In this document: piece after piece, positions 45,601 through 64,000 of the stretch | Position numbering within the stretch: the first letter of the stretch is position 1 | Layout of the letters: the number at the start of each line of letters is the position of its first letter | Source: Oikopleura dioica | Lineage: Eukaryota; Animalia; Chordata | Reading direction: 5' to 3' | Assembly (NCBI GenBank): GCA_907165135.1 | Contig: OU015567.1 | Span: 11,160,001 to 11,224,000, forward strand | Length of the DNA stretch: 64,000 nucleotides | The notes under the pieces: generated by a model | The model's input: the letters and a program-made list of their open reading frames with translations, nothing else | Database searches by the model: none | Told to the model about the DNA's origin: nothing | Position numbers and translations under genes: made by a program

Positions 45601-46540
45601 TAAAGCTTCTTGGATAAAGAGAATTGTAGGTTGTCTGGGAAAATATCTCGCTGGTGCTTGCCGGATTCGAGCAAATAGGTTACCGTCGGTGAAAAGAGCG
45701 AAAATAGGCGGATAGAGCTCAAACACCGCTGTCACGCTATTGGTAAAGTTTGTAGTTTTAATTTGACGCGGGAAGCGAGGGGAAGCTCACTCTCTGATGA
45801 GAACTACACGAGGAAGCTTTTCAATCAACTCGCAACGTTTGCGGAGCTGGTACAATACTCCTTTGATTTTTCGCCTTTCAAAACCCAGACCCACCGACTC
45901 TACCCTTTCATACTGAACTTGAACAACCACTCGAGTATTTATAACGGCTTATGATCGCTAGAAAATCAAATCAAATAAGAGAAAGTGGAAAGCACTAGCC
46001 TAGGACCACTATTTTTTCATTTAAATTTTTCACTTCTGTTTCGTGCATAAAAAAATGATGATTTAAACTTACTTTACAGATGATGAAGCCTTCTCAGCGA
46101 TGGAAGAGGGAATCTGAAGATTACCGATGGATGCTCGTTTTCTAAAAGAAATTCGACCAGCGTCAGACTTGCGTCGCTCCCTTAGCATCACGGAGACGTC
46201 CTTTTTAGTTTCCTCTTCATCTTTGAGTCGGGTTGAAATGAAAATAATTATTAACTTTTTGACTTTCAGATGACCACGCGGCGATCATATGAGAAATTAA
46301 TATCCGCCGACGGACAAACTCATTTCTGTATGAAAATTCAGCTTCTTTTTTAATACCCGAGTAGAAGTTGCCTTTCACGATGCAAGATACGACTATAATA
46401 ATGATACAATATCCTGGCAGATGTGCTCTTGTTAGACAAGCTAGATAAGCTTTAGCCTTTCATAATCTAAAAGATGTTCAACCCGGCTCCTTCGTTTTGC
46501 AGTGCAATGTCGTATTGGTTGAACTGTTCCAGCAACTCAG
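36623..46540 (-). CDS. FHOD: FHOD-family formin (end of FH3, linker, FH1, FH2, DAD); 5' GBD/FH3 exons not found in the window
   Basis: ELLEQFNQYDIALQNEG (end of FH3, ~46480-46535), poly-Pro FH1 followed by VKLFWTEIR, ITVLDQKRSNAINI, LASAEQFL, IGNHLN..APEVKDTVHKHSLVHHV, SDFALEFKT, and a DAD-like EEMIESLAQ..RERNRTLNKGLSPEE before TGA at 36623-36625. Confidence 0.92.
38070..38907. mobile_element. Non-autonomous TIR element (MITE-like, Kolobok-type termini) in an FHOD intron
   Basis: Perfect 16 bp TIRs GGGTGTCCCCAACGAT / ATCGTTGGGGACACCC, flanked by TTAA on both sides (38066-38069, 38908-38911). No ORF. Internal ~33 bp direct repeat (CTGCATTAATCGAGAC) near 38180 and 38350. Confidence 0.85.
42409..42966 (+). 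pseudogene. Decayed, intronless coding-like sequence nested antisense in an FHOD intron
   Basis: TATAAAAG near 42325 and an ATG in good context at 42409. Coding-like stretches continue across frames with stops and shifts, ending in a Lys-rich 108-aa ORF. Confidence 0.3.
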
Positions 46541-46920
46541 CTGGTGGGGGTCATCTGGATCATCTACTCGCAGAAAATTCAGATAAAATTCAAGCCAATT
46601 TTTGTGCGAAAGGGGTGATTTTTTCATTTAAAAAATATGCCGAGAGAGTGGCAGGATAAAGAATAGTGACCAGGTGCGCTACTTTATTAGCTACAAAACC
46701 GGGAATGTGTTACTATAAGAATAGAGCAAATATAGAATAGAGTGACAAAGCGGTCATACATTTGTCGACAGTGAAACTCTCAATTTTCATCGTTTGAAAA
46801 TATATTTTAAAAAAGATTGGTTTACTGAAGACTAGCTCCGGTAAACAGCTATATTCTACCTACAACCGTGTTAGTGCAATTTTAAAATCATCATCATATT
46901 TTGTGTTGTATGATTTTAGT

Positions 46921-47545
46921 GACTCCGTGCCTTTCGGGCGTATGTAATAGGTTCGATATTCACCTGGTTCGAAGTGTACCTGGTTCGAAGTGTACTCGGT
47001 TCGAAGTGTACTCGGTTCGAAGTGTACCTGGTTCGATATGTACCTGGTTCGAAGTGTACCTGGTTCGAAGTGCAAATTTTCGAAGTACTTCGAACAAATC
47101 CCCTTCGAACCAAGTACACTTCGAACCAAATACACTTTTTTCTAAAAGTGGCTCCGACACAATTAAAACAATTTTCCCAACTTTTTGAGCACATTTCCAA
47201 CAAATTTTCCAACTTTTTCGAACAGATTTCCAACAAATTTTCCAACTTTTTTCGAACAGATTTCCAACAAATTTTTCAACTTCCTCGAACTCATTTCCAA
47301 CAAGAATTCCAACGACAGGGTTCACGCGAAGCGTGCCAATTCCAGCGACAGGGTTCACGCGAAGCGTGCCAATTCCAGCGACAGGGTTCACGCGAAGCGT
47401 GCCAATTTCTCCACTTACAACAGGGTTCACGCGAAGCGTGCCACTTTCTCCAGCCGGCCTGCTCAACTTCCTGCTCCGCCTTCCCTAATTCTAATACCCT
47501 CTATTTGTGCGTCTTAATATATACGCGCGCGGAGCGCGCCCCTCC
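46921..47545. repeat. Composite minisatellite element: 16 bp array with inverted copies, ~31 bp array, 33 bp x4 hairpin array
   Basis: (CC/CT)GGTTCGAAGTGTA-type 16-mers at ~46963-47070, with inverted copies at ~47085-47135. TTCCAACAAATTTTCCAACTTTTTCGAACAGA-type units at ~47170-47305. ATTCCAGCGACAGGGTTCACGCGAAGCGTGCCA x4 at ~47306-47445. GCGCGC-GGA-GCGCGC hairpin near 47524-47538. Confidence 0.9.
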
Positions 47546-47559
47546 CGAACTTTTTCAAC

Positions 47560-47752
47560 AGGTGTATTTTTGGGGAGGGGGTGGGAGGTTGTGGGCGTTT
47601 CCTCAAGGGCTACATTCTCGTGAGACCTGCGGCTTTTTTTGCCCCAATTTTTTATATGTTTGTTATTCGAAGTATAAAAAAAGAGGTGTATTTTTGGGGA
47701 GGGGGTGGGAGGTTGTGGGCGTTTCCTCAAGGGCTACATTCTGGTGAGACCT
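47560..47752. repeat. Direct repeat (~70 bp, period 124) containing a G-quadruplex motif
   Basis: AGGTGTATTTTTGGGAGGGGGTGGGAGGTTGTGGGCGTTTCCTCAAGGGCTACATTCT occurs at 47560 and, nearly identically, at 47684. Confidence 0.85.
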
Positions 47753-48335
47753 ATAGCTTTTTTTTGTAATCGTTTTATATTGTACTCAGCTCGAATATTC
47801 TATCTCAAATTACTTTGGCAGAAGTTAGTTGTGATAAAATAATCGAGCAAAATTTTTTGTGGAAGATGCGATTATTAGTGATAGAGTACTCTTATTCTTG
47901 TATTTTTATGTCGACCTTGCTTTGGCAGAAGCGTTGTCGAAAAATTTTTACTCCTTCGCTAATAAATGCGTTCTTTCGTTTTATACTAAGGTCAAAAATG
48001 GGTGCTCGATTCGATTTAGTTCATAAGTGACGGATATTCTCTAATTTTTGCCTAATTTCGCTTTGGCAGAAGCGTTGAAAGGCATTCTCTAATTTTCCTT
48101 CACTTATGCTCTAGATCTATTGGGCGAAGCTAGTAAAATTGGATTTTTCTCGCTCCTGGTGCACCGGCGCTTGTGCGCTCTCATTGGTCCACGTCGGGTG
48201 AGTCATTCTTTCTATAGAAGTTTTCGTTAAATTTAATGAGAATGCCCTTTTTTCTGCTCTCTTGTGTTAGAAATCTCTTTAACTACCTTCTTATCTTGTT
48301 TTTAACTAAATTTATCTTTTTAAGAGTTTTTGGCG

Positions 48336-49336: not shown

Positions 49337-52300
49337 TTACATTTCTTTCTCGTCAAAATATTCTTTGGTAACATGCGTTTTAGGAAGCTCGACTGTCTTA
49401 TTTTCGTACTTGCTTGGATCGTAGTTCCAGTAGGGCGCGAATCTTTTCTTTTCTGCCTTTCCCACTGCTTTTTCTCTATTTGCCTTTCCGCCGCTTCTTC
49501 TATCTTTGATACTGTTGAGCCATCGCTTGTAGTAGCTTTCGTGGAATGTGCACGGTGGCGTTCCTGCAAACAAGTTACGTTTTTATTAATTGTTAGTAAC
49601 TACCTTCATACGGTCCTTCGTTTTCGTCCATTATTATAATTCTTTCGTATTTTAGACAGCACGGGTCTCGTCTCTCTTCAATTTCTGCTTCGGTCGAATC
49701 CTGCGTGTCGACTCGTCTTAAAAATGTTAGGTTGAATATATCGTTATTTTTACCTTAATACCGACGTCTCTGCTGTCTCCTGACGCGCCTGCGTGCAATC
49801 AATTACCGTTTCTAATTTTATTAATAATAAGTATTTTGATTTGTATCTACCTTGCTGGGACGCGATGAAACTTGTTCTTTCTTGTACTTCTGCGTGTTTC
49901 TTTCGTTCGCTTTCAGTTGTTTGCTCTTTCTGGTCTGCTCTTCTGTCTTTTTCAGATTTATCTTCTTTTTCTCTGGTCTCCTTTTCTTTTGCGGCGAATT
50001 CAGCTGCATTTCTTTCTGCGAGGTTGTCTTGGTTTTAATAATTATCATGTTATATAATCTTATTACCAAAGTTCTCATTGCTGAAGCTTCCCGTCGCAAA
50101 ACTCTGCTGGCTTCCTGGGGTCGAATCTTGTGATGCGATGTTATTGTTCCTTCGGTAGATTAAATCTTAATTTTATTGTATGTAAAGCTTGTTTTGTCTG
50201 TATTACCAAATTCCTCATCATCGAATTCATCATCAAATTCGGCCGTGTCATGTTTTACCTCTGCCGGGGCATAGTTGTTTTGGTGATCAGCAATTTTGTG
50301 GTTAACCTTGTAAGGCTGCAAGTTCTCTGGCGAGGACCTTCTTCCACCTGCGATATCTCTGCGGTAAATGCTATAGAAGCGAGGCTCGAATCTAGGTGTA
50401 GCTCGAGTATTTATTACAAGACGACTGATGCGCTAGGCGCCGGACAGTAAGAGCGCGGCCTCAGATAAAGATCTAACGCCTCAGGATTTGCATCCTCACA
50501 TCCCCCTCAGACTTTAGATGAGGTTCTATGTACAGTAACACGTAAAGAAATGTCTTCGTGTGTAGATTCGTTGCTTGAAGAATATCTCTTCGAAATCGAT
50601 TCACTAGTATTTTTGGCCTTTGTTGGAGGCGATATTGAGCTTTGCAGGCTCGAATCGATTTCTCTTTGGACGAGTAGCGGATTCGACGTGTAGTTGAACT
50701 GCGGAAGAGTCGGCTGGGCGCTTACGCGGCGCGCTTGGCACAGTCAGCGGGGCCGTGGGAAAATTCGTCGGAGTTGAATCGGCGGCGGGCGCTGATTGGT
50801 CGACAGCTCCAGCAATGATTGAGAGCTCATTTTCGGCTTCGCTGAAATCCTCAGAGTTCCGAGAATCTTCAAGGGAAGAATTTGCAGAGACAAAAGTCGG
50901 ATCGACTGATCTCATAGTGGCATCTGCTGGGTAGAGAATCTGATGATCAGAAGAGCTCGATGAAGATGAATTTTGCGGTTCGGGTGAGACTTCTGAGTTT
51001 TGTAGCGGTTGTTTCACCGGAGTAATTGATTGATTCTGCAGAGTTTCTGACGCACTTTTCTCACCTTCTGTACTCTTTTCTGTGTTATTTCTAAGCTGTT
51101 CACCTAGAATTTTCGGAGTACCTATTTCAGCTGATTTCGGAGGCGCGTCGGCAGAATTTCGCGTTTTATGACTCTCATCCCCCTCAGACGGGAAATTCGA
51201 AGGTTTTGCTCGATCTTCGACAATACTCGTCAGATGCTGCCAAATGTATAGTTCCTCGTCGCGGTGAATTCGGTCAACTTGGTGTAAATGTTCGGCACGC
51301 TCATCGGCTGGTACCACATGACCACGATAGACCCAGTCACGCCGTTTTCGGCCATCTTCGACCATGCAAACGGACTCGTTTGACTTGATCAGGCGTAGTG
51401 GACCGACGTACTTCAACCCGGTAGTTTTACCTTGTGAATTCAGGTCTCTTTTTAAATACACAAGTTGACCTTCGGTTAAGGTTGATGGAGGTAGCTTTTT
51501 CTCATTGCGGCGATCCGAATCGAGCTCAGCGGCCATGTTTGCGACTTCAACGAGCTTGGAGACGCGCTCGATCCTCTTACGAACGCTGTTCCCATATTCG
51601 CCTGGATTATCGGCGGCTTTATCAATTCTCGCAGTACCGAGCCAACAGTCTCGTGGAATTTGGCCCGTCGCTTTGGATTTGCTGGCGTTCATCGCCCTGA
51701 GAACATAAGGTAAGCACTGTTTCCAATCCATATTTTCCGAATGGCTCATTGAGTACAGCCCATTTTTCAAGCTTCTATGGCTGCGTTCGACAATGCCATT
51801 GGCTTCTGGTCGCCAAGCACAGGTCAAAGTATGGTCGATCTTGTTCGACTTGAAAAATTCATCGAGTAGAGCATTAGTAAAGTGCAATCCACGATCGCTA
51901 TGAACTCGGTTTGGCCAAAAGTCGTACTGAAGGCATACTTGGGTCAGTGCTTGTGCGGCGGAGAAAGCGTTGTCTTTTCGACAAGGCACTGCCCAAAGGA
52001 ATCTGCTGAAAGCACAGATGATAGTGAGTAGATATTTACAACCACTCGCGGGAGTTTTCATCGTGACGTAGTCAATGCAGAGTATATCACCCGGATGTCT
52101 GCCTTTTCGGACCGTACCGGTCGGTGGAGCTTGAGGTCGGCCATGAGCGCCTTTGACTTTTAAGCATGATTTGCACGATCGTACGTAGTTTAAGCAGTCT
52201 GCATCCATGTTTATCCACCAAAGAAGCTTCAAGTGCTCCTTCATTCGCGGCAGTCCACAGTGGCCTTTTAGATCGTGCGCTCTTTTCACGAAAGTAGATC

Positions 52301-55300
52301 TAAGTGACTCTGGAACAACTGCACGTGGGCCGCGTCGATCATTTATCACGAGAGCGTTCGATGTGCGGCAAATAGCGAGCTTCTTTTCGATTTTCAGAAA
52401 ATGGCTCCGGCGGTGGTCTTTTCCGTCGATAACAGTGGCTAGACTCACTTCTGAATTTGAATCCTGAGCCCTTTTTACCGCACCAATAATCGTTTTTAGA
52501 AATGGATCATCTTCCTGGTACGCAGCTAGACAACCAAGTGGGCCGTCAAGTTTCTCCTCCTCAAGTGGGCGCAGAATCCTCGCTGTGTGTACGGCTACTA
52601 GTTGCCGCGCGTTTTTCGGGATCTTCGCTGGATCGGAGCACCAAGAAGGTATGTAGACGACTAGTTTCGAGTCGCCAATGGTCAAGAATCTGCCCGCGTT
52701 TCTGGCTTGATCGAGCTTCGGTTTCTCACTGTCTTCTGCTCCGAAGGGGCGTGAAAGCCAGTCCGCAAAGGTGTTTTTCTGGCCGCGGATAAATTCAAGG
52801 ACGAAGTCGTACTCGGATAGTCGGAGTTGCCAACGGGCAATTTTACTGTTTTTGAAAACAGTTTTGTCGAGATAAGTTAAACTCGCGTGGTCTGTATGGA
52901 CCACAAATTTGGTCCCTTTGAGTATTTTCGAGAGTTTTTCGATTGACCAAAGCACTCCGAAAGCCTCTTTTTCGCTCACATTCCAGTTTCTCTCCGTTTT
53001 ACTGAATGTTTTAGATACAGCGCCGACAAGTCTTGTCGTGCCGTCGATGATCTGTGTCAATACGCCGCCACATGCAGTCAGCGAAGCGTCCGTGTGAAGT
53101 GCGAACGGGTGGCGGAAGTCTGGAAAATTGATGACCGGCATGGACGACAGTCTGGACTTGAGCTTCGAATATGCTTCATCCGCTTCATCGGACCAGACAA
53201 AGGGAGGCGGAACGTATCCGCGTTTACATGGGACGAGCAGGTTAGTAATCGGCTTCATTACTGCTGCGAAAAGATTTTCACCGATTTTCTCGCCCATTCT
53301 CGCTTCCGAAAATTGTTTCAACCATGTTAGACTGCCCACCAAGCTTCGGAGCTCTTTGTGGTTGGTAGGGACAGGCATTTTCAAGAGCGCCTCGGTGTAG
53401 TCTGGATCTGGTTTGACCCCATTTTTAGTAATGACCCGGCCGAGGAACTTGGCTTCCGTCTGGAGAAATTGGCATTTTGATGGCTTCAATCGGACACCAA
53501 AAGCAACCACCGCAGCCAAGAGTTGGCGGAGTGACTTGCGATACGTCGCGAACGAGTCGCCGAACTGGATGACGTCGTCGACGTAGTTGGCCACGTTTTG
53601 GCGCATTTTCACCGTGTCGAGCATTCTGGCGACGCTGCGGGAGAATATCGCTCCGGAAAATGTATAGCCAAATGGCACCCTTGTGAATGCGTATGTCTTC
53701 CCTTTCCACTGGAATGCAGTTTTCACCTGGTCTTCCTCTTTCAAACGGATTTGCCAGTAACCACTCTCAAGGTCCACGCAAGTGAAGTACTTTTGGCCTT
53801 CTCCGAGACTGGCTATGATCTCGTCCATTGCTGGCATCAAAAATGGATCGGACTGTGGGGACAAGCACTGGTTTACTGTCGGAGCGAAGTTAACGACAAA
53901 TCTTGTCGATTTGTCCTTTTTGTCGACCAGCATAATCGCGCTGTTCCATCCTTTTGGATCGTCGATTTCGCGAATTGCTCCTCTGGTCAGCATTTTATCG
54001 ACATGGTCGTCGACGAGTGGGTGTTGTGCCAGCGGGATTGGATGCTGCTTGCGATTTCGTACCTCGCCTGGTACAGTACGTAGCTCAGCTTCTTCCGGAA
54101 AGACGCCAAGTTCAGTTGAGCTAGTGGCAAACGCCTTGCTGAACTCTTTAAGGTCACCAGCGACGATAAGACGTTCTTCAAGTGGCGCGCTGCTCGGCAG
54201 ATCTATACCCAAGTTCCGTTTTACCCACAAGATTGGGTTATCCCTGTTAGCTTGGTGATTTTCGTCCCCGCCGTCTGGTTTGGCGCACCCAACTCGGTAA
54301 TCCTTTACGAGCGGGACCTTCAGTGGGGGATGTGACTTGTACCGACCGTCGAAAATCAGGCGAAAGCTGTTCCGACCGAGTTCAACTGCGCGAACGTCTC
54401 GGCCGCGGATGACGTCTCGTCCCAGCAGGCATGGGCACGTCTCCAAAATGTACACATTGGCATCGAGTTCCGGTCCAGAGCCGAATCGAAGTTTCAGCTG
54501 TAGTAACCCAAGTGGGCTTTGAGCTCGACCGTAGAGCCCCGAAATCGTCAACGGAGCGGGCTTGAGTGACTTCAACATTGCTGCTGGAATTACTCGCCGC
54601 GGCAGTATCGTGGAGAAGCTGCCAGAGTCGATTTCGCATTTGATCTCGAATGACCCGTGTTGGTTCGCAAAGGATGCACTAGCAATAAATGGGTCTTCCA
54701 CTAGTGCAGGTAAGGATTGGTACACCGGAGCGGCTCGAAGAACTGCGAGCGATAGCGCGTCTTCGCTGAAGTCTTCGTCGTGGTCAGCCTCGGTTATGTG
54801 CACTTTTTGGTCGTTTTGACCGTCATCTCCGTCATCCTTAGCCTTTTTACCACTTTTCTGGCCGTTTTGACCCTTTCGACCTTGTTGGCCTTTTTGATTT
54901 TGGCCTTTTTGGTTTTGGCCTTTTTGATTCTGGCCTTTGAAGTTCTTCCCATGCCCATTTTTCTTTCCGTTATACTTCGGTTTACCAACATAGTGCGTAT
55001 TTCCTTCTGTCGGACTCATATTACGTCTTAGGCTTTCGGCGGCGGCGGCGAGTTCATCTGCTTTGAAAATATCCTTCATCCGGTCGATGAGCATGTTGTA
55101 CAACTCGGGCATGTTGACGCGCAGTTTCTCGGTCAGCAGATGCGTCGCGAAGATATTGAAGCAGTCCTGGGCGGACATCTCTTTGTCCTTGTGTGCCCTT
55201 CGGAACTCCTTTGCGCTAGCTTCGTAAGCTTCGTTCAGTTTCGTCTGAACTTTCCCGGCGTAGTCATGGACTGGAAGAGCAATGTCGAACTCGATGTTGG

Positions 55301-56959
55301 CCGCTTCCGATATAACCAACAGGTGGTTTAGCTTTCCTCCGAATTGGTCGTTGATCAGCTTTTTAGCTTTTTGGTACGTGTCGCATGCGTCGAGTTGCTG
55401 GCCAATGGATCTGGACGGAGCAACGTCAAGGTGAGCTCTTAGACACGAAAGAAAAAAATTTTCTTTATCAGGATCAGCCCTCTTCAAAGTTCGATCGTAG
55501 ATGTATGACTTGAAGAAGCTGTCGGCGAGTCCAATGAAATTATCAGTTTCGGTTGGACTAGTGCCTTGGAATTTTGACGATCCGAAGTGTCTGGAGAAGG
55601 CATTATTGATCACTGACGCCGAAATCGCCGACTGACTATTCGACGAAGAAGATACGGAGCCGAGCGGAAGTTTTCCCGACATGACGAGTTTCGTTACTGC
55701 CGCGATGTTATTTTCAACTTCCTGTAATTTACTTTCTAGTGCTGTGCGGCTAGCTGCATCTTCTATATCTTCGAGGCCTTCAGCGTAAGCTTCCTTCTTA
55801 GCTTCGAGCTTTTTGTTTATTTCGAGCGCTTTCTGGACCGTTGTGATGCTATCCAAGTCGAATTTAACAGCTGGCATAGTTCGAGCGGGGACCTTGATTC
55901 GACTGGTTAACTGTAAGCTGAGGTCAGTACCTGGACCGATCCCTCTGACTCAAGTTTTGGATACTTGGTCAGATTCTAGGGATATTCGGTCTGCGAAGGG
56001 ATTCGGCAAAACCACTGGAATACTGTGACGAGATGAGATGGTTGAGGAGCAGCGAGCAAGCGTGTCGAAATTGGGCGTAAGTTATCTGTGAGACTAGCAA
56101 ACTACCTCGGCAGTTCCCTCTGACGCAAGTTTTGGACTACTTGGTCAGATTATAGGGACTTTCGGTGCGCAAAGAGCAGCAGAAATCCCCAAAAGTGCCA
56201 GATCGCAGATTTGCACCAGTTGACGTGCTTGTTAGAGAAGGTAACGTTGATAACGGAATCGACGATCAGATTGATTAGCAGCCCAGGTAAAACTAACGAG
56301 AAGAAGTATCGGAAGAACTGGATTTGTACCTGGCCTGACCCCTGTGACCTTGAGAGAAAGTCACTTGGAGGGGCGTACGATGCGAAAAATTTTGGCGGGC
56401 GAAGTTGTTGTCGACGTTGATAAATTCAGTTGGAGAGCGCGCGGAATGTTTTTGTCGTTGAGTCCCTCGAGCCGTTTTTGACGACTTGGAACGGATTCGA
56501 CAGCTTCCAGAAGACGAAGAAAGGATGTACGTACGTGGGGTTGTTGATTGGAGGGTTTAACTAGGTTCGTTGGATCCAAAAATAAGTACCGGTTTGTGTT
56601 TTTGTGTTACTCGAGGAGCCGTCTTGAACTTCGCAAAAGATCACGAGACACCACTTGTAAGGCTGCAAGTTCTCTGGCGAGGACCTTCTTCCACCTGCGA
56701 TATCTCTGCGGTAAATGCTATAGAAGCGAGGCTCGAATCTAGGTGTAGCTCGAGTATTTATTACAAGACGACTGATGCGCTAGGCGCCGGACAGTAAGAG
56801 CGCGGCCTCAGATAAAGATCTAACGCCTCAGGATTTGCATCCTCACAACCTTTAATTTAAGTCAACAATTTTCCTTTTTTTGCTCTTTACCTTTTTTGGT
56901 TTACGATCATTGTCAACTGGGTTGCATTCCATCGGTTCTGGACTTGTGAAGTTAACCAT
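49337..56959 (-). CDS. Orphan charged/hydrophilic protein gene, 7 exons, host of the LTR retrotransposon
   Basis: Exon 1 (56891-56959) reads MVNFTSPEPMECNPVDNDRKPKK. Exon 2 starts at 50306 (VNHKIADHQNNY..), and five more exons join through phase-compatible ~40 nt GT-AG introns to TAA at 49337. The empty-site reconstruction gives a 41 nt first intron. Confidence 0.8.
50309..56847 (-). mobile_element. Full-length Ty3/gypsy LTR retrotransposon (Tor-like), very recent insertion
   Basis: Identical 192 bp LTRs (50309-50500, 56656-56847) with TG..CA ends. 4 bp TSD ACCT (50305-50308, 56848-56851). PPT GAGGGGGA (50501-50508). TGG-starting PBS-like site 2 nt inside the 5' LTR (~56636-56653). AATAAA within the LTR. 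Confidence 0.97.
50604..55877 (-). CDS. Single gag-pol ORF (1757 aa): Gag, protease, RT, RNase H, integrase; no env
   Basis: PR IDSGS, RT DLESGYWQI..PFG..YVDD, RNase H LHTDAS..KEAFGVLWSI..HTDH, IN zinc-binding H..GH..C..C and core DYV..SDRGLHF..NGIVER, in gypsy domain order. Confidence 0.97.
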   Translation of the reverse strand: MPAVKFDLDSITTVQKALEINKKLEAKKEAYAEGLEDIEDAASRTALESKLQEVENNIAAVTKLVMSGKLPLGSVSSSSNSQSAISASVINNAFSRHFGSSKFQGTSPTETDNFIGLADSFFKSYIYDRTLKRADPDKENFFLSCLRAHLDVAPSRSIGQQLDACDTYQKAKKLINDQFGGKLNHLLVISEAANIEFDIALPVHDYAGKVQTKLNEAYEASAKEFRRAHKDKEMSAQDCFNIFATHLLTEKLRVNMPELYNMLIDRMKDIFKADELAAAAESLRRNMSPTEGNTHYVGKPKYNGKKNGHGKNFKGQNQKGQNQKGQNQKGQQGRKGQNGQKSGKKAKDDGDDGQNDQKVHITEADHDEDFSEDALSLAVLRAAPVYQSLPALVEDPFIASASFANQHGSFEIKCEIDSGSFSTILPRRVIPAAMLKSLKPAPLTISGLYGRAQSPLGLLQLKLRFGSGPELDANVYILETCPCLLGRDVIRGRDVRAVELGRNSFRLIFDGRYKSHPPLKVPLVKDYRVGCAKPDGGDENHQANRDNPILWVKRNLGIDLPSSAPLEERLIVAGDLKEFSKAFATSSTELGVFPEEAELRTVPGEVRNRKQHPIPLAQHPLVDDHVDKMLTRGAIREIDDPKGWNSAIMLVDKKDKSTRFVVNFAPTVNQCLSPQSDPFLMPAMDEIIASLGEGQKYFTCVDLESGYWQIRLKEEDQVKTAFQWKGKTYAFTRVPFGYTFSGAIFSRSVARMLDTVKMRQNVANYVDDVIQFGDSFATYRKSLRQLLAAVVAFGVRLKPSKCQFLQTEAKFLGRVITKNGVKPDPDYTEALLKMPVPTNHKELRSLVGSLTWLKQFSEARMGEKIGENLFAAVMKPITNLLVPCKRGYVPPPFVWSDEADEAYSKLKSRLSSMPVINFPDFRHPFALHTDASLTACGGVLTQIIDGTTRLVGAVSKTFSKTERNWNVSEKEAFGVLWSIEKLSKILKGTKFVVHTDHASLTYLDKTVFKNSKIARWQLRLSEYDFVLEFIRGQKNTFADWLSRPFGAEDSEKPKLDQARNAGRFLTIGDSKLVVYIPSWCSDPAKIPKNARQLVAVHTARILRPLEEEKLDGPLGCLAAYQEDDPFLKTIIGAVKRAQDSNSEVSLATVIDGKDHRRSHFLKIEKKLAICRTSNALVINDRRGPRAVVPESLRSTFVKRAHDLKGHCGLPRMKEHLKLLWWINMDADCLNYVRSCKSCLKVKGAHGRPQAPPTGTVRKGRHPGDILCIDYVTMKTPASGCKYLLTIICAFSRFLWAVPCRKDNAFSAAQALTQVCLQYDFWPNRVHSDRGLHFTNALLDEFFKSNKIDHTLTCAWRPEANGIVERSHRSLKNGLYSMSHSENMDWKQCLPYVLRAMNASKSKATGQIPRDCWLGTARIDKAADNPGEYGNSVRKRIERVSKLVEVANMAAELDSDRRNEKKLPPSTLTEGQLVYLKRDLNSQGKTTGLKYVGPLRLIKSNESVCMVEDGRKRRDWVYRGHVVPADERAEHLHQVDRIHRDEELYIWQHLTSIVEDRAKPSNFPSEGDESHKTRNSADAPPKSAEIGTPKILGEQLRNNTEKSTEGEKSASETLQNQSITPVKQPLQNSEVSPEPQNSSSSSSSDHQILYPADATMRSVDPTFVSANSSLEDSRNSEDFSEAENELSIIAGAVDQSAPAADSTPTNFPTAPLTVPSAPRKRPADSSAVQLHVESATRPKRNRFEPAKLNIASNKGQKY

Positions 56960-57812
56960 TCTAAAATGTTTATTTTAAATTCTTATTCCATGGGCCGTTC
57001 GACATAATTATTTGAATTATCGCCCTTTGTCCTCTCTATAAATTTCTCTTTATTCATTTGCATCTAAAGGTTTATCATTATCTCTCTTAGATTTATTCAT
57101 TTTGAATAAATATTTTTACATGTTTCATTTGCCATTTTAGGCCAATAAACTTTGCTCACATGAGGTTATGCTTTACAAAAGTTTTGTGTCGAACGATTTT
57201 GTCGCCTCAAAATTATTTTTGTTTTAAGTTAACAAACCTTGTTTTAGTCTGTCAGCCGCGTGCGATTGCCTGAAGTTTTCGATCAGCGCCCATTGGATTA
57301 CTTCTTTGTTGTCTTCGCTATTGCCTCTGTTTCGCTAATAGTTCTTGTGTCCCCTTATTTCATTACCTGTTTATACTTGTGTTATTCTAGCGTGAATGCA
57401 GGGTTGTAACTGTTGTTCTCGCGAACGGTTGGAAATTCTAACTTAGGTTCGTTTCGTTCTATTTATTCTTAGGACGTTTCCGTTTTATATGTTTATTATT
57501 CAACTATTAAGCTCAAATTCGAGAACGTTTTTGTTTTTTAAAGTCTTACTGTTTCATTTTATTCGGAGTGAACGGTTTTCGTGTATTTTTTTGGCGGATC
57601 AATTGCTGCTGTCTTCATTTCTCAGCGTTTATTTAAATCATTAAGTGTTCGTATTTGTCCATTGCGAGTCTTTATGGTATTTTTTTGCACCTACCGGCAA
57701 ATTTCACGAATTTCGTGAAAACTGCTGCATTTTTTCGCCAAAAATCTCACTGAAACGCTAATGCTCCGTGTTCAATTGTTCTGATTCGGCTGTAAAAAAA
57801 GGTTTTTTTTGT

Positions 57813-57828
57813 GGCCCTTAAAAGGGCC
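57813..57828 (-). terminator. Replication-dependent histone mRNA 3' stem-loop
   Basis: The minus strand reads AAACA-GGCCCT-TTTA-AGGGCC-ACAAA, 24 nt after the stop of the H3-like ORF. This fits the 6 bp stem / 4 nt loop consensus. Confidence 0.85.
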
Positions 57829-57852
57829 TGTTTTGAAGAGCCAGGTCGGTTC

Positions 57853-58242
57853 TTATCGTCGTCCTCGCAATCGCAGGGCGAGTTCCATGTCGCGCTTTTG
57901 AAGCGTCTTTCTTTTGGCGTGGGTGGTGAACTCTCCCGCATCGTTGAAGATGTCCACAATTCTGCTCTCTACAGCAGTTTGGAGTGCTTCGAGAGCTTTA
58001 GACGCGATGCGGAGGGGGTATTGGATGGTCTTGACCACTTCCTTGGTGAGGCGGGCGAAGGGGAGTTTTCGAATCAGCAGCTGCGTGGACAGTTGCATGT
58101 CGATGGCCTCTCTTTTTGCGACTGTGCCGGGCTTGAACTTGTAGCGCCTTTTCGGGGCGCCATGGCGACATTGACGGTTGTTGCAAGGGGCAGCGACGCT
58201 ACATGTGCCTGTCTTGACGGGGGAGCTTTTGGTTCTTGCCAT
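57853..58242 (-). CDS. Highly divergent, intronless histone H3 variant (129 aa)
   Basis: MARTK start, KPGTVA.RE, STQLLIRKLPFARL, ALEALQ.A.E, HAKRKTL..RDMELA.R.RG. TATAAAA box at 58301-58307 and a histone stem-loop downstream. Confidence 0.92.
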   Translation of the reverse strand: MARTKSSPVKTGTCSVAAPCNNRQCRHGAPKRRYKFKPGTVAKREAIDMQLSTQLLIRKLPFARLTKEVVKTIQYPLRIASKALEALQTAVESRIVDIFNDAGEFTTHAKRKTLQKRDMELALRLRGRR

Positions 58243-58542
58243 TCGCTTAGTCTTCGCTGTGTTCAGGTTGGACTGTGGTTGGCTGTGCTCCTGTCATCCC
58301 TTTTATAATTTGGGTTGCGATGTGAGGGAGACAACCCTTTCCCCCAAAAAGGGTTTAACTACAAACAATTCTAGAGAAAACTTTCCGGTGGCCAATAAAT
58401 TGTCAGAATTTTGGTTTCCTCCCTTTTTTGGTCTAGAATTTTTAACGTTTTTTTGTGGATTTCCGACTTAAATATCTTATGTTCTTGATTTTTTGCCATT
58501 ATTTGCTTGTTAAATTTGTATTTATTTTAATTTTTAGAAATT

Positions 58543-60178
58543 ATGGCCGTCGAAAATCGGATGATTTTGTGGTTCGAAGAGTGCTGTCATAATATCTTGG
58601 CGGAGAACGTTGATGATGCTTTAAAAATGGCTGAGAGTGAAAGCGAAGCATGCAAAAAATTTCTTAGAGTAAATGCCATTAATTGGTCTCCGAAATTTAT
58701 CCTTCTGCGCATTACGATCAAAGAAAGATTGAAGATTGCAATTTCGGACCAAATCCCATTGGAAAGGATTGAAAAAATCGTTCTCTATGACGCGGATGAT
58801 AACAAAATTCAACTTATCTCCGAAGAATCGATTGAAGCAGGTTTCTGGGAGTCAGTTAACGATTTACTTGTTTGCCCAAATGGAATATTGAAGAAAGACG
58901 TTAACTTAAGAAAACAATATGATCAATCTGCGATTCAAATGGCAGATGAAATAATAAGGAACTGTGATTCTTGCTCTGTTAAAACTTGGGCTGAACGCAA
59001 TGACAGATTTGATTCTGAAGATTGGACGAATAATCTGCTGATATGTATCAAAGGAAGATCCTGTAACGAGACACGAATAGAAAGCTGGGTGACTGCGCTC
59101 AAGGCGAGAGAGTCTTGTTTGGGAGACTTAAAATGGAGAATCAAATTCGGACCTTATTCATTTACTCCGGTAAGGACTTGAAATATTTTGCATTTTATCG
59201 TTTTTCTTTTAGAAGTGCTTCCCTTCTGGTAAAACAACTGCAAAGGATTGCATAACAATCAAACCGCCGCATCTTAAATGGAAACCTGATGTTAGAATGA
59301 TTGAAGAAATCAAGAAGATGTCTGACTATGGCGTAACAATATTTGAAAACTATGTTAATTTTCACCCTGCGGATTTATCTCGTCTCTCCGAAGATAGATA
59401 TATCATCAGAAAGTGCATGGCAATCTTCAACGCGAACAGGAACAATATCGAGATGGCTTTACTGAATAAGCCTAGGGCACTTAACATCCTGCTTTCTTTG
59501 TTGGATGATGAATCAAACTCCGATGGGACAATGATGACTATTCTCGACGAAATTTCTAATGCCAGGATGGCTCAATCTGAAAAACATTTGCTTAAAGAGC
59601 TTGAAAAACTGCTCTCAAAGCTTTATCCCTCCAAAAAATCAGTTGCCGCGCGCAAGATAACACTTGAGAAAATAAGAAAAAGCGAGAGAAGATGGAACTG
59701 GGTGGACATAATTCAGGAAAAATTTGACCTGGACGTTGTTGTCATGCATGAAATAAAACAGTTCGGCCGTAAGCTTTCTAATGGAATCGATACTAATGAC
59801 GTGATTGTACGGCTTCTCGACAAAATAACCTGGCGAAATGGTCATTTTGGTATGGAACAGCGTGTCAAATCCCGTGGATATAATCATGACGATCATCATT
59901 TCTGTTGGTTTGGTAATAATGAAGAGGAAATTATAAGAACATTCATCGAATACATCACCGGAAACGCTGTTTCACAGCAAGAATTATTTCAATTATTTGG
60001 TCATTTTAATAAGGACGAATTGCTTAATCAAAGCCCCAGTGAAGAGCTCGATGGACAGAATAGACAATGTAGAAAAAGGTCGGGTGCTAAGGTGGACCGA
60101 ATGAATACAGTCGAAAACAGATGTCCTTGCATCAAGTTTGTTGAAAAACATGAGGAATCGTCAAAGAAAAATGTCTAG
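58543..60178 (+). CDS. Orphan gene, two exons (58543-59169, 59213-60178), ~530 aa
   Basis: The 212-aa and 293-aa ORFs join in phase 0 across a 43 nt GT-AG intron. No domain recognised. Confidence 0.75.
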
Positions 60179-60867
60179 CTAAAAAAAAATTTCTGCATAT
60201 CCTTCATAATTGCCTTACTTCCAAATTATTTCATTCCGTCGTATATCATTAATCTGCCAATAACGCTGCTTTGTCAATAAGACGAATAACAAAAATATAC
60301 GCGATTTAAAAAAAATGCAATTTTGAAATGAAAATTCGCATTTTTATTTTTAAAGAAGATTAATGCATAAGTTAGAATCAATCAACTATCTCAGAGAATA
60401 TTTGATATATTGATCTTCTAGAAGTCAATGTGTAGCTTTAGTAGCAGGTTAATCATATCGTTCTGCAATTTTTGGAATCTGGATTCTGATTTATAATTTA
60501 ATATGAATTAAACGGGTGTTTTAGAAGTCTTCCTGGTGCCCAAACAAAGCTTTTGTATAGTAATCGCATAAAATTTTTACTCATCTCAGCGCATGAAAAT
60601 CATCTTGTATCCTTTAAAAAATGCTGGTTCTTCTTCGATCGACTTGACGCATTGTTGTTCGTTTTTATTTTGGTCACTTTCGGCTGGCAGTACCTCGTAA
60701 ATAATTACCGGCTCTTCGAGTCAAAGTTCTCTTGAAATTCAGAAAATATAAGAGCCACTAGAATCTGGTGTTCATGGGCTTTCGATTGATTCGCCGAACT
60801 TTGAAATTTACTTAAATCTTGTTTTTGGGTTTTCTCTTGGTCTGAATTCTCGCGAGAGTCCCCTTTC

Positions 60868-61969: not shown

Positions 61970-62764
61970 TTGCTGTCAAATTTTGAATGAGTATTCTCGT
62001 TTGTTTGGGCGATGTCGAGTCCTATTGTATTGTTTTAGGGAAATAATTGAAATAAAAGTTAAAAATTTGTAGTTTTGGTATTCTGATGTCTGCTATGATC
62101 TCTTATCGCGCGCCTCGATTTTTATTTCGGCGCCCACTGGGAGGTTTTCTTCGTTGATTTCATGTTTTTGTTTTACAATTTGGCGCTATCTCTGCCTGAG
62201 CTCTGTCACAAAAAGATATATGATAACATAAAATGCAAGAGTTTTCTACCTTTGACTCGAACAGACATTAACAGAAAATTGGAAGCAGTCCAATTATATA
62301 ATTGATAAACCTGCAAGAAGAATTCCCTTTTTGTCAAAATTGTTAGGCCTTTTATGAGATAACAAGTAATTCAACGTTTTTTTTTTTAACATCTTGAATA
62401 TATTAGCAGTCACGAAATTTGAAACAGTTGTATTTTTTCTATGAAGGCAGGTATAATGTGAAGTTGACTGCTTGTAATCGTTGGGAAAGAAGTTGATCAT
62501 TTTCAATTGAAGATATGTCTATTATAAAGGGTTATTGTAGTCTTTTTTGAGGTTTTTTTTAATAAAAATTTTTCTTACGTTAAATTATGCAGCATTGTCT
62601 TTTCAATAACACTTGAAGAATAATTTGTAGAAACTGTGGTGAGTCGGGCAGTGCTAGAAAATGGTTATTATTTTTTTTTTTGTGTTAAGTTAAGTTTAGG
62701 ATTGCCAAAGTTGACCTTTCATGATTTCATAAGTTTAGTTTACCTTATAATGAATTGCTGGAAA

Positions 62765-63655
62765 TTAGAAACTCTCGTCGGATGGTGATTCGTCGTCTAA
62801 GTCTAGGTCTTGAGCAGTAGTCAGTTCTTTGGCAATTGACTCCAGGGCAGTGTACATTTGCTGGGCAGATGGCTTTTGTTTCTTCTTGTCAAATTTGGGT
62901 AAAAACATGTAGAGAAGGATGATACTGATTAAAATAAACAAGAGAACTCCTGTTATTCCGTAGTTCACGAGAGGGCTGATCAGTCGAATCAGGAAGCAGA
63001 ATATTCCAATGCGCATCGCCGTATTTTGAAACAGGGAGACGACACAGTTAAACAGGCTCGCCATAATGTTGCGCAGGCATCTAGCGGCTCGTTCTGAATC
63101 GCGAGAGTAGAGTGAGCAGGCGAGTTCGACGACTGTGGCCAACTTGTCTTGAAAGAATTCCTTCACTGATGCAGCGCTGTCCGGGGGTGACCTGTACAGT
63201 TCTCTTGCTGTATTGAATGGCAGAGTGATCCAAAATAGGAAGAACAATTTGATTTTCTTGATCACCGATTTGCTGCCATTGTTTTTTTCTGTTGAGTCGT
63301 TGCTTACTATTTCTTCTATTTTACCAGCGTCTTTGTCTAGGCGCTTCTTTTGACGGTTGATTTCAGCTGCGAAGGCCTTGCTGTATCCTGATAAGAAAAT
63401 TAAACGGGGAGTCTCTCAACAATCCAAGAAAAAATTTATCTTCGGAAGTTATTTTATCTGTAATCAAAAATTACCTTTATCAGCCGGGGATAAATGGGAT
63501 CCATCTGATTTGACCAAACCGCACGGAGTCTGATGGACACAGAAGGCGCAAGGAGTAAAAGGGGCTAAATTATTTTGTCCCCGTATTCAAGAAGAAACAG
63601 AATGAATACCTGGACATGTTTGCTGAGTGGCTGTCTTTGTCGTTGATTTTTTCAT
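62765..63655 (-). CDS. Orphan membrane protein, 3 exons, ~250 aa
   Basis: MKKSTTKTATQQTCP|APFTPCAFCVHQTPCG..DK|GYSKAFAAEINRQKKR.. joins in phase 1 across GT-AG introns. It has C-terminal hydrophobic segments (IGIFCFLIRLISPLV, GITGVLLFILISIILLYMFL) and an acidic tail. Confidence 0.7.
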
Positions 63656-64000
63656 TTTGACTTGTTCTGCTTTTGATTTCTCTGCAAAATTTGTAAATAT
63701 GCTAAAAAAATTGTTTTCCGGCTGGTGTGGGAAGCTGAAATGAGTGTAGAGTGAGCGTGATAATAGTGGGAACAACAGCTGCAGGAATGATTTTTCAGGA
63801 GCGGAATGAAATAATCTGAGCCCGTCGCAGACGATCCTAACTTAAATTGATCATTCGTGACTTTATGAATGGCAAATGAACTTTAATCGAGTGAAAATTT
63901 CATCCTCGCGCTCGGAAATAAACAATCCTGGAAATATACAGTGCTGTTATAAAAATTTAAACTTTCGCTGCTGTTAGCAAAATATCTTTGGTGGATAAAA

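What the first reader, a model, noticed from the sequence alone, without database searches (positions are those of the whole stretch)
57813..58307. Extremely divergent H3 with a Cys-rich tail and some cenH3-like residues, yet a replication-dependent stem-loop
The tail keeps K4, K9 and a K36-equivalent but is 6 aa shorter, lacks K27 and has three cysteines. The fold has Q68A and T107A (cenH3-like), but no loop-1 insertion and F84I rather than W. K56, K79 and C110 are lost. The gene is intronless with a TATA box and a canonical histone stem-loop, and no other histone genes are nearby. It could be an atypical centromeric H3 or a germline/sperm variant able to disulfide-crosslink chromatin and evade Polycomb marking (inference). 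I cannot tell whether it matches an already catalogued O. dioica variant.
Basis: partly seen in the sequence, partly recalled or inferred. Interest (0 to 1): 0.75.

Follow-up and report, generated by a model that had tools for sequence, protein, structure and literature searches.

The report
Uncatalogued divergent histone H3 gene
The tunicate Oikopleura dioica keeps two selected copies of a very unusual histone H3 with a three-cysteine tail, absent from its published histone catalogue and sitting in a large duplicated block of extra DNA-replication genes; where it is expressed could not be tested.

Summary
Window 57853-58242 (minus strand) is an intact, intronless 129-codon gene of the H3 family. 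It has a TATA box and the species' own histone stem-loop.

- **Sequence:** the fold is about 50% identical to H3. The tail is 6 residues shorter and lacks K14, K18, K23 and K27. K56, K79, C110 and K122 are replaced.
- **Catalogue:** it matches none of the six H3 proteins published for O. dioica. In particular it is not the published CenH3, which has 2 introns, no stem-loop, a longer loop 1 and F84W.
the window is Okinawan O. dioica, and a second copy (67% identical, also 129 codons) lies on the PAR chromosome of the same assembly.
- **Selection:** dN/dS between the copies is 0.27 at dS about 1. A Tara Oceans allele differs only in the tail.
- **Conserved features:** three Cys and one His in the tail, the promoter block and a 39-nt stem-loop block.
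- **Context:** both copies occupy the same place in a duplicated block with RING and PCNA-fold genes. This scan had already noted that block on neighbouring DNA. The paralogy ends in layered tandem repeats, beside formin exons.
- **Relatives:** nothing closer than ordinary H3 appeared among 1.84 billion representatives.
- **Expression:** not testable here.

The germline role is plausible but unproven; a centromeric role is unlikely.

The parts
57853..58242 (-). H3v coding sequence: 129 codons plus stop, no intron
   Evidence: The exact product is on record in GCA_907165135.1, record OU015567.1, and is in NCBI nr/UniRef as a predicted protein.
58162..58203 (-). Tail motif C14-x5-C20-x4-C25-x-H27 (Met = 1), within CSVxxPCxxRxCRHGAP
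   Evidence: Invariant in the window copy, the Tara allele and the PAR paralog, while 4 other tail residues differ between the two alleles. No Pfam match. The AF2 model leaves the tail disordered.
57813..57828 (-). Histone 3' stem-loop: 6-bp stem, TTTA loop
   Evidence: Identical to stem-loops in Table S1 of PMC3156773.
57804..57842 (-). 39-nt block around the stem-loop, 100% identical between the two paralogs
   Evidence: Coding dS between the same paralogs is about 1.
57628..57633 (-). AATAAA about 180 nt downstream of the stem-loop; candidate poly(A) signal, not conserved in the PAR copy
   Evidence: Read. PMC3156773 reports a stem-loop plus a downstream poly(A) signal for O. dioica histone genes.
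58300..58307 (-). TATA box (TATAAAAG), 58 nt upstream of the ATG
   Evidence: Conserved as ATAATAAAA in the PAR copy.
58311..58357 (-). Conserved promoter block holding an 8-bp inverted repeat (AACCCTTT / AAAGGGTT)
   Evidence: Nearly identical between the paralogs. The block is unique in the window and the fetched loci.
58363..58378 (-). Second conserved upstream block (TTCTCTAGAATTGTTT)
58543..59181 (+). 212-aa orphan ORF head-to-head with H3v; not in the called-gene lists for either copy
   Evidence: 75% identical between the copies, dN/dS 0.20. No Pfam hit. Its only hit is a 99% identical Tara metagenome protein. No gene is called there.
59297..60178 (+). 293-aa orphan ORF (306 aa in the PAR copy); no gene is called there in either copy
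   Evidence: 70% identical, dN/dS 0.21. No Pfam hit.
62765..64000 (-). 3' part of a membrane-anchored RING gene, where the earlier-noted replication-gene cassette begins
   Evidence: tblastx collinearity. The PAR ortholog g11992 has RING Pfam hits. The called gene is in L005.
46924..47795 (.). End of the duplicated block: layered tandem repeats (16-nt x6.9, inverted 16-nt x3.2, 33-nt x4.2, 33-nt x4, 124-nt x1.9)
   Evidence: Nucleotide paralogy with PAR stops at 46924. The same layers stand at the end of the PAR copy.
50305..56890 (-). LTR retrotransposon inserted in an intron of the gene downstream of H3v; absent from the PAR copy
   Evidence: RT, RNase H and integrase Pfam hits. It appears as a gap in the collinearity. 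Coordinates come from note s1-330347.

Best explanation
H3v is a functional, lineage-restricted histone H3 paralog, neither a pseudogene nor the centromeric H3.

**Shown.**
- The Okinawan O. dioica genome holds two copies, one on OU015567.1 (this window) and one on the PAR chromosome. Both are 129 codons long.
- The copies have diverged under purifying selection.
- Each lies at the same position in a large duplicated block. That block also carries two orphan ORFs, RING genes and PCNA-fold genes.
- The block ends in layered tandem repeats and has different flanking genes at the two sites.
- The gene is intronless and TATA-driven, and it ends in the species' own histone stem-loop.

**From earlier notes of this scan, not read by me.** The block also carries primase, an RFC1 paralog and an H4 variant.

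**Inferred mechanism.**
- The mRNA is processed through the stem-loop pathway, so supply is tied to DNA synthesis.
- The protein pairs with H4, or with the block's H4 variant, and is laid down behind replication forks.
- Its nucleosomes cannot carry marks at K14, K18, K23, K27, K56, K79 or K122.
- They hold the DNA ends more loosely (R52I, R53D, K56L).
- They grip the dyad region more tightly (V117K, P121K).
- They have a rebuilt H3:H3' four-helix-bundle face (L109E, C110F, 111, 112, 125, I130L). This would favour H3v-only tetramers.
- The invariant Cys3-His tail motif would bind zinc or form disulfide links between tails.

**Most likely setting (inference, about 35-40%).** The fast-cycling male germ line, with the protein retained in the protamine-free sperm.
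For: **H3 family.**

**Two copies in one assembly.**

**Selection between the copies.**
- The reading frame and its length are kept at dS about 1.0.
- dN/dS is 0.27, with a bootstrap 95% interval of 0.16-0.44.

**Tara Oceans allele.** It has 4 amino-acid changes, all in the tail. In the fold it has none, against 4 synonymous changes.

**Conserved features.**
- The Cys3-His motif is invariant.
- The promoter blocks and a 39-nt stem-loop block are conserved between the paralogs.
- The stem-loop matches the species consensus.

**Shared substitutions.** Listed against 58 H3 sequences.

**Duplicated block.**
- Collinearity with the PAR locus.
- PCNA_N and PCNA_C Pfam hits lie 7-12 kb from the PAR copy.
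- The block boundary sits in layered repeats in both copies.
- Formin FH2 exons flank the window copy; a beta-galactosidase gene flanks the PAR copy.

**Leads towards the male germ line.**
- In Table S1 of PMC3156773 the TTTA-loop stem-loop occurs in 6 male genes and 1 early-tadpole/day-5-male gene out of 7. Among other loop types, 7 of 25 genes are male (Fisher p=0.01).
- The K79 patch is altered in all male H3t variants.
- Sperm keep nucleosomes and have no protamines.
Against: **No expression evidence.**
- No listed RNA run holds the stretch.
- Four RNA runs gave zero depth over 57000-60400, apart from stem-loop reads that belong to other histone genes.
- The neighbouring ORFs were also uncovered, so a mismatch of cryptic species cannot be told apart from a silent locus.
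- Apart from the genome assembly, only two metagenome contigs carry the protein, as its 81-residue C-terminal part.

**Limits of the other evidence.**
- The Rfam score is 3.6 bits below the family's gathering score.
- All structural consequences are read from substitutions against general knowledge of the nucleosome; none was modelled. The AF2 monomer was mediocre (pLDDT 70) with a disordered tail.
- Physical linkage to replication genes does not show functional coupling.
- The stem-loop association rests on clustered, non-independent genes of another O. dioica lineage.
- T3 of ARTK is Ile in the Tara allele, so the extreme N-terminus is not tightly held.
Confidence: 0.6

Rival explanations
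1. Cargo of a giant mobile or virus-like element. On this reading H3v serves the element: it packages or marks the element's own DNA, or works with its private clamp, primase and clamp-loader genes. It would not be a host chromatin variant.
For: - Both copies lie inside a block of about 50 kb whose paralogy stops in layered tandem repeats at both sites.
- The flanking genes differ between the sites.
- The window copy has formin exons and a 4.9-kb ORF-free gap on its left. Note s1-371666 places the same formin gene at the far end, which suggests insertion into an intron.
- PCNA-fold genes and a Mutator-like gene are adjacent (notes s1-371329, s1-319389).
- The nearest cluster by protein features in the Atlas is half viral, which is a lead only.
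Against: - The gene carries the host's own histone stem-loop and a host-type TATA promoter.
- I saw no terminal inverted repeat or target-site duplication, and I could not read the far end.
- Earlier follow-up agents judged the block an old, selected host module.
- The copies are old (dS 0.7-1.0), and all genes compared are under purifying selection.
Confidence: 0.2
2. An ordinary segmental duplication of host genes. H3v would be a somatic or embryonic replacement-like variant, for example for endocycling tissues, with no link to sperm or to the neighbouring replication genes.
For: - The duplication is collinear, with every gene compared under purifying selection.
- O. dioica is known for many stage-specific histone variants (PMC3156773).
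- No male-specific evidence was obtained here.
Against: - The stem-loop loop type, the K79 patch and the SPxK motif point towards the male set.
- The boundary repeats and the different flanks fit an inserted unit better.
Confidence: 0.15
3. An atypical second centromeric H3.
For: - The fold is only about 50% identical to H3, and the protein evolves fast (dN 0.28 between copies).
- T107A is shared by both copies, and Q68A is present in one.
- The charges that hold the DNA ends are weakened, as is known for CENP-A nucleosomes.
Against: - No loop-1 insertion.
- F84I, not W.
- The tail is short and starts ARTK.
- It has a stem-loop and no introns.
- The published CenH3 has 2 introns, no stem-loop, an extended loop 1 and F84W, and is reported at centromeres as an eGFP fusion.
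Confidence: 0.04
4. A decaying or silent gene copy with no function.
For: No reads and no transcript contigs were found.
Against: - The ORFs are intact and of equal length at dS about 1, with dN/dS 0.27 (95% interval 0.16-0.44).
- There are no fold changes between the two alleles.
- The promoter and stem-loop are conserved.
Confidence: 0.05

Closest known systems
O. dioica male-specific H3t.1, H3t.2 and H3t.3 (Moosmann et al. 2011, PMC3156773)
   Same: - Intronless.
- Same stem-loop type; H3t.2 also has the TTTA loop.
- The surface around K79 is altered, and K79 itself is replaced in H3t.3.
- Same species.
   Different: - H3t proteins differ from H3 by about 13 residues at most, whereas H3v differs at about half of the fold positions.
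- H3v has a shortened tail with three Cys.
- The H3t peptides listed in Table S2 do not occur in H3v.
- H3v has no core-histone neighbour.
CenH3 / CENP-A, including the published OdCenH3
   Same: - About 50% fold identity to H3.
- Rapid evolution.
- Loss of basic residues in the alpha-N region.
   Different: - No loop-1 insertion.
- I rather than W at position 84.
- A short tail that starts ARTK.
- A stem-loop and no introns.
- The species has a separate, localised CenH3.
Mammalian testis or primate H3 variants (H3t/H3.4, H3.5, H3.Y); solved nucleosomes 3a6n, 5ay8, PMC4714512
   Same: Lineage-specific H3 paralogs whose substitutions alter nucleosome stability or the DNA ends.
   Different: - They differ from H3 at a few up to about 26 residues.
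- None has a Cys-rich tail.
- There is no orthology.
Sperm nuclear basic proteins with SPKK motifs or Cys crosslinks (sea urchin sperm H1/H2B; mammalian protamines); from my own knowledge
   Same: - SPxK (this copy) and SPKK (PAR copy) near the N-terminus.
- Clustered Cys and His that could bind zinc or form disulfides, as in protamines.
   Different: - H3v is a full histone-fold protein.
- The motif spacing C-x5-C-x4-C-x-H fits no Pfam family.
- No sperm evidence was obtained here.
Histones encoded by large DNA viruses (Nucleocytoviricota)
   Same: A very divergent H3-like fold encoded next to replication genes. The nearest Atlas cluster by protein features is half viral.
   Different: - H3v is a single histone, not a fused doublet.
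- It uses the host's stem-loop and promoter type.
- No viral hallmark genes were seen in the DNA I read.

Membership tests
Histone H3 family | Histone fold with an alpha-N helix, alignable to H3 over the whole fold | tested here: met
   Pfam PF00125 E=1.8e-29. The top PDB hits are all H3, at about E=1e-25, gapless over residues 25-129.
Histone H3 family | Core four-helix-bundle residues H113, D123 and L126, and the N-terminal ARTK | tested here: met
   H113, D123 and L126 are kept in all three sequences. ARTK is kept in both genomic copies and reads ARIK in the Tara allele.
Replication-dependent histone genes | No intron, and a conserved 3' stem-loop shortly after the stop codon | tested here: met
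   The ORF is continuous. The stem-loop lies 25 nt after the stop codon, with Rfam E=3e-6 but 30.4 bits against a gathering score of 34. It matches the species' own stem-loops exactly and is conserved in the paralog.
Replication-dependent histone genes | Placed in a core-histone cluster with a shared divergent promoter | tested here: not met
   There is no other stem-loop or histone ORF in the window. The head-to-head partner is a non-histone orphan ORF.
Replication-dependent histone genes | S-phase-coupled expression | not testable with these tools
   The RNA runs gave no reads on the gene or on its neighbours.
CenH3 / CENP-A | Extended loop 1 | tested here: not met
   The alignment to H3 is gapless.
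CenH3 / CENP-A | Trp at the position of H3 F84 (the feature used for OdCenH3) | tested here: not met
   Ile in both copies. The criterion comes from PMC3156773.
CenH3 / CENP-A | Centromere localisation | not testable with these tools
   This needs tagging or ChIP.
O. dioica H3t male variants | Near-canonical sequence with the listed diagnostic peptides | tested here: not met
   The Table S2 peptides (such as ELAQQWK, DMWLAR and YRPGTVALR) are absent from H3v. The fold is 50% identical to the H3 consensus.
O. dioica H3t male variants | Testis-specific expression | tested here: inconclusive
   Searches were uninformative. The only lead is the stem-loop loop type.
Virus- or transposon-encoded histones | Located inside a bounded mobile element or viral genome | tested here: inconclusive
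   One structured boundary was seen in both copies, and the flanks differ. The far end was not readable, and no terminal inverted repeat or target-site duplication was shown.

The most novel reading that the evidence does not exclude
H3v and the divergent H4 gene reported about 38 kb away in the same block form a private H3-H4 pair. On this reading the block's own sliding clamps, clamp loader and primase deposit that pair. The roughly 50-kb Mutator-associated unit would then be a self-contained kit for replication and chromatin assembly, carried as a unit and copied to at least two chromosomes.
Probability: 0.12. Interest if true: 0.9.

Novelty: new variant of a known kind. Interest (0 to 1): 0.62.

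Why it matters
H3 is among the most conserved proteins. Here a copy has changed half of its fold and lost nearly all classical modification sites. It has gained a conserved Cys3-His tail motif, yet it keeps the replication-type mRNA end and is held by selection in two copies.

It would be a natural experiment on three questions:
- What an H3 nucleosome can tolerate.
- How variant-only tetramers might be kept apart from canonical ones.
- How a protamine-free sperm, or a specialised replication programme, might compact or mark chromatin.

It also adds a histone H3 to the duplicated clamp, primase and H4 block that this scan found in O. dioica. It gives that block a second structured boundary that can be tested.

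Tried and rejected
**Expression.**
- No RNA holder was listed.
- Reads from 3 bulk runs and 1 single-cell run gave only stem-loop reads belonging to other histone genes. The neighbouring ORFs had no reads either.

**'Ortholog' reading dropped.** I first took the 67% match (P0001) for an ortholog from another cryptic species. One search showed that both lie in the same assembly, so they are paralogs.

**Search for more relatives.**
- The word search found only P0001 and a Tara fragment.
- In the full profile search the best single-domain non-family hit scores 111 bits, against 245 bits for the paralog. The higher-scoring rows I fetched are concatenated canonical H3 models.
- Orthologs more than 50% identical would be hidden inside the same clusters, so absence from other O. 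dioica lineages is not shown.

**Neighbouring orphan ORFs.** They have no Pfam hit, no homologs and no usable Atlas hit.

**Structure.** The AF2 monomer had pLDDT 70, merged helices and a disordered tail, so I ran no fold search on it.

**Tail motif.** It has no Pfam family.

**Promoter block.** It is not repeated elsewhere in the readable DNA.

**Walking along the chromosome to the H4 variant.**
- This stopped after the PCNA genes, because the next gene models are spliced.
- Nothing in the fetched DNA is H4-like.

**Mutator-like ORF fragments on PAR.** They gave no Pfam hit at E<=0.01.

Full report
**1. The observation**

Window 57853-58242 on the minus strand is an uninterrupted ORF of 129 codons. 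Pfam places it in the core-histone family at E=1.8e-29. The best solved structures are all H3, at about E=1e-25, and align without a gap from residue 25 to the end. There is therefore no loop-1 insertion.

The stem-loop GGCCCT-TTTA-AGGGCC lies 25 nt after the stop codon, at 57813-57828.
- It is the only such site in the window; 0.03 are expected by chance.
- Rfam's Histone3 model scores it 30.4 bits, E=3e-6. This is below the gathering score of 34, so the whole-window gathering scan lists nothing.
- With its flanks AAACA and ACAAA it is letter for letter one of the stem-loops tabulated for O. dioica histone genes (Table S1 of PMC3156773).

A TATAAAAG box lies at 58300-58307.

- K4, K9 and the K36 equivalent are kept.
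- K14, K18, K23 and K27 are gone.
- The tail has three cysteines.
- K56L, K79Q, F84I, T107A and C110F are present.

There are two corrections. Q68A is private to this copy. The protein also lacks the last residue of H3.

**2. Which genome, and a second copy**

The exact 129-residue product is on record in assembly GCA_907165135.1, record OU015567.1, at about 11.218 Mb. It stands in NCBI nr and UniRef as a predicted protein. This assembly is the Okinawan O. dioica OKI2018_I69, as the source names attached to P0001 and P0122 show.

The closest protein anywhere is P0001, which is PAR.g11993 of the same assembly.
- Its gene model starts at an internal Met.
- The DNA shows a full 129-codon ORF that starts MARTK.
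- The two are therefore paralogs, not orthologs. They are 67% identical in protein and 69% in DNA.

**3. Selection**

*Between the paralogs.* Nei-Gojobori estimates are dN 0.28, dS 1.0 and dN/dS 0.27, with a bootstrap 95% interval of 0.16-0.44. The values are similar in the tail and in the fold. Frames of equal length, still intact at that divergence, argue against a pseudogene.

*Within the species.* Two metagenome contigs, at least one from Tara Oceans, carry an allele that is 97% identical.
- It has four amino-acid changes: T3I, T12L, N21S and Q23I. All are in the tail.
- The fold has four synonymous changes and no replacement.

*Conserved tail elements.* Cys13, Cys19, Cys24 and His26 (Met not counted) are invariant in all three sequences, as are the surrounding CSV, PC and CRHGAP.

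*Conserved non-coding DNA between the paralogs.*
- A 39-nt block around the stem-loop is 100% identical.
- The TATA region and part of the 5' UTR are conserved.
- So is a promoter block of about 47 nt with an 8-bp inverted repeat.
- So is a 16-nt block further upstream.
- The promoter block occurs nowhere else in the DNA I could read.

*Rate.* H3v has changed about twice as fast in protein as its two orphan neighbours. Those have dN 0.14-0.16, dS 0.67-0.77 and dN/dS 0.2.

**4. What the substitutions imply**

This section is inference from the known nucleosome structure. Nothing here was modelled. Against 58 H3 sequences, both copies share H39Y, R40K, I51A, R52I, K56L, V71T, D81P, F84I, Q85A, T107A, L109E, C110F, V117K, I119L, M120Q, K122R and I130L. 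K79 is Q in one copy and H in the other.

| Region | Changes | Expected effect |
|---|---|---|
| alpha-N, holding the DNA ends | R52I, R53D, K56L | Basic contacts lost, so looser ends |
| Loop 2 and start of alpha-3, near the dyad | KRVTIMPKD becomes KRKTLQKRD | More basic, so a tighter grip |
| H3:H3' four-helix-bundle face | Positions 109-112, 125 and 130 changed; H113, D123 and L126 kept | May favour H3v-only tetramers |
| Dot1 target patch | K79, T80 and D81 changed | As in the male H3t variants |
| N-terminus | SPVK in this copy, SPKK in the PAR copy | A CDK-type site, and the motif known from sea urchin sperm histones (my own knowledge) |

The C-x5-C-x4-C-x-H motif matches no Pfam family. 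AF2 leaves the tail disordered. Zinc binding or disulfide bridging is therefore a hypothesis.

**5. Comparison with the published catalogue**

Moosmann et al. 2011 list 10 H3 genes encoding 6 proteins, plus a truncated H3sh.
- H3.2 and H3.3 are identical to the vertebrate proteins.
- The H3t proteins differ at about 13 positions at most.
- OdCenH3 has two introns, no stem-loop, a longer loop 1 and F84W. As an eGFP fusion it localises to centromeres.

H3v fits none of these. The H3t peptides of Table S2 are absent from it. No later paper in the library describes such a variant.

In the profile search of 1.84 billion representatives, the paralog scores 245 bits and the best single-domain outsider 111 bits. 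The higher-scoring rows I fetched are concatenated canonical H3 models. Orthologs more than 50% identical would be hidden inside the same clusters, so I cannot say whether other O. dioica lineages have the gene.

**6. Context: a duplicated block**

The window from 63904 down to 46924 is collinear with the PAR locus, in inverted orientation. The shared order is as follows.
- A RING gene.
- A 293/306-aa ORF.
- A 212-aa ORF, head-to-head with H3v.
- H3v.
- Two downstream genes.
- A repeat-rich end.

The LTR retrotransposon at 50305-56890 is present only in the window copy.

Beyond the window end the collinearity continues. On PAR the next genes are as follows.
- A 199-aa gene.
- A 197-aa RING-like gene.
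- A merged gene model with PCNA_N and PCNA_C hits.
- A further 258-aa PCNA-fold gene.

This is the cassette that earlier agents of this scan described from window position 62001 onward (s1-371329) and on other pieces (s1-319389, s1-371325). They report a Mutator-like gene, several clamps, primase, an RFC1 paralog and an H4 variant. The scan therefore found the block before, on neighbouring and other DNA. H3v had not been tied to it.

New here is the block's H3v-side boundary.
- Nucleotide paralogy stops at window 46924 and L001 14444.
- In both copies it stops just past the same stack of tandem repeats: 16-nt units, inverted 16-nt units, two 33-nt arrays and a 124-nt pair.
- Outside the boundary the window has 4.9 kb without ORFs and then formin FH2 exons on the minus strand.
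- Outside the boundary PAR has a beta-galactosidase gene.

An unverified note (s1-371666) says a formin gene also runs into the far end. If so, the block spans about 51 kb and lies in a formin intron. I could read neither the far end nor the H4 variant. No H4-like gene lies in the DNA I fetched.

**7. Expression**

This is the decisive missing piece.
- No RNA run was listed as a holder.
- In four RNA runs the only reads on 57000-60400 were stem-loop reads that continue into other histone genes.
- The neighbouring ORFs were equally bare. The runs may come from another cryptic species under the same label, or the locus may be silent in those samples.
- Apart from the genome assembly, only two metagenome contigs carry the protein, as its 81-residue C-terminal part; no transcript-derived contig does.

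**8. Verdict**

H3v is a real, intact and selected H3 paralog with a replication-type 3' end. It is extremely divergent, it is absent from the published catalogue, and it is present twice in a duplicated replication-gene block.

The centromeric reading is unlikely. The sperm or germline reading remains plausible on circumstantial grounds only.
- In Table S1 the TTTA loop type marks 6 male genes and 1 early-tadpole/day-5-male gene out of 7. Among other loop types, 7 of 25 genes are male. Fisher's test gives p=0.01, but the genes are not independent and come from another lineage.
- The K79 patch is altered and there is an SPxK motif.
- Sperm keep nucleosomes.

A reading as cargo of a giant mobile unit cannot be excluded.

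Noticed in passing
window 58543-59181 (+) and 59297-60178 (+); L001 9039-9677 (-) and 8046-8966 (-): Two long ORFs (212 aa and 293/306 aa) lie head-to-head with H3v. No gene is called there in either copy. They are 75% and 70% identical between the copies, with dN/dS about 0.2. They have no Pfam family and no homolog other than Tara metagenome contigs of the same lineage.
   Followed up: partly
window 46924-47795; L001 13400-14444: The duplicated block ends in a stack of tandem repeats: 16-nt GGTACACTTCGAACC units, inverted 16-nt units, two 33-nt arrays and a 124-nt pair. The stack is conserved in kind at both copies. It may be a transposon-like subterminal structure.
   Followed up: partly
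window 39877-42028 (-), and 42029-46923: Formin FH1/FH2 exons are followed upstream by 4.9 kb with no ORF of 110 aa or more. That is unusually empty for this compact genome. It fits a huge intron holding the block.
   Followed up: partly
L001 10001-10360 (PAR.g11993): The annotated model of the PAR paralog starts at an internal Met and gives 119 aa. The ORF continues upstream to an MARTK start, giving 129 aa.
   Followed up: yes
window 57805-57839 in RNA runs X1, X4-X6: Oligo-dT and single-cell libraries hold reads that cross histone stem-loops of other genes and continue downstream. This fits the published statement that O. dioica histone transcripts carry both a stem-loop and a poly(A) signal. 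One read set continues into a sequence that contains the first 14 bases of the published H3t.1 reverse primer.
   Followed up: no
L010 1-4412 / L011 11005-17601: A 1711-residue gene model on PAR appears to merge several genes: an acidic-tailed protein, Mutator-like ORF fragments and PCNA-fold parts.
   Followed up: no
window 50305-56890: An intact-looking LTR retrotransposon with a 1757-aa ORF (RT, RNase H, integrase) sits in the intron of the gene downstream of H3v. It is absent from the PAR copy, so it was inserted after the duplication.
   Followed up: partly
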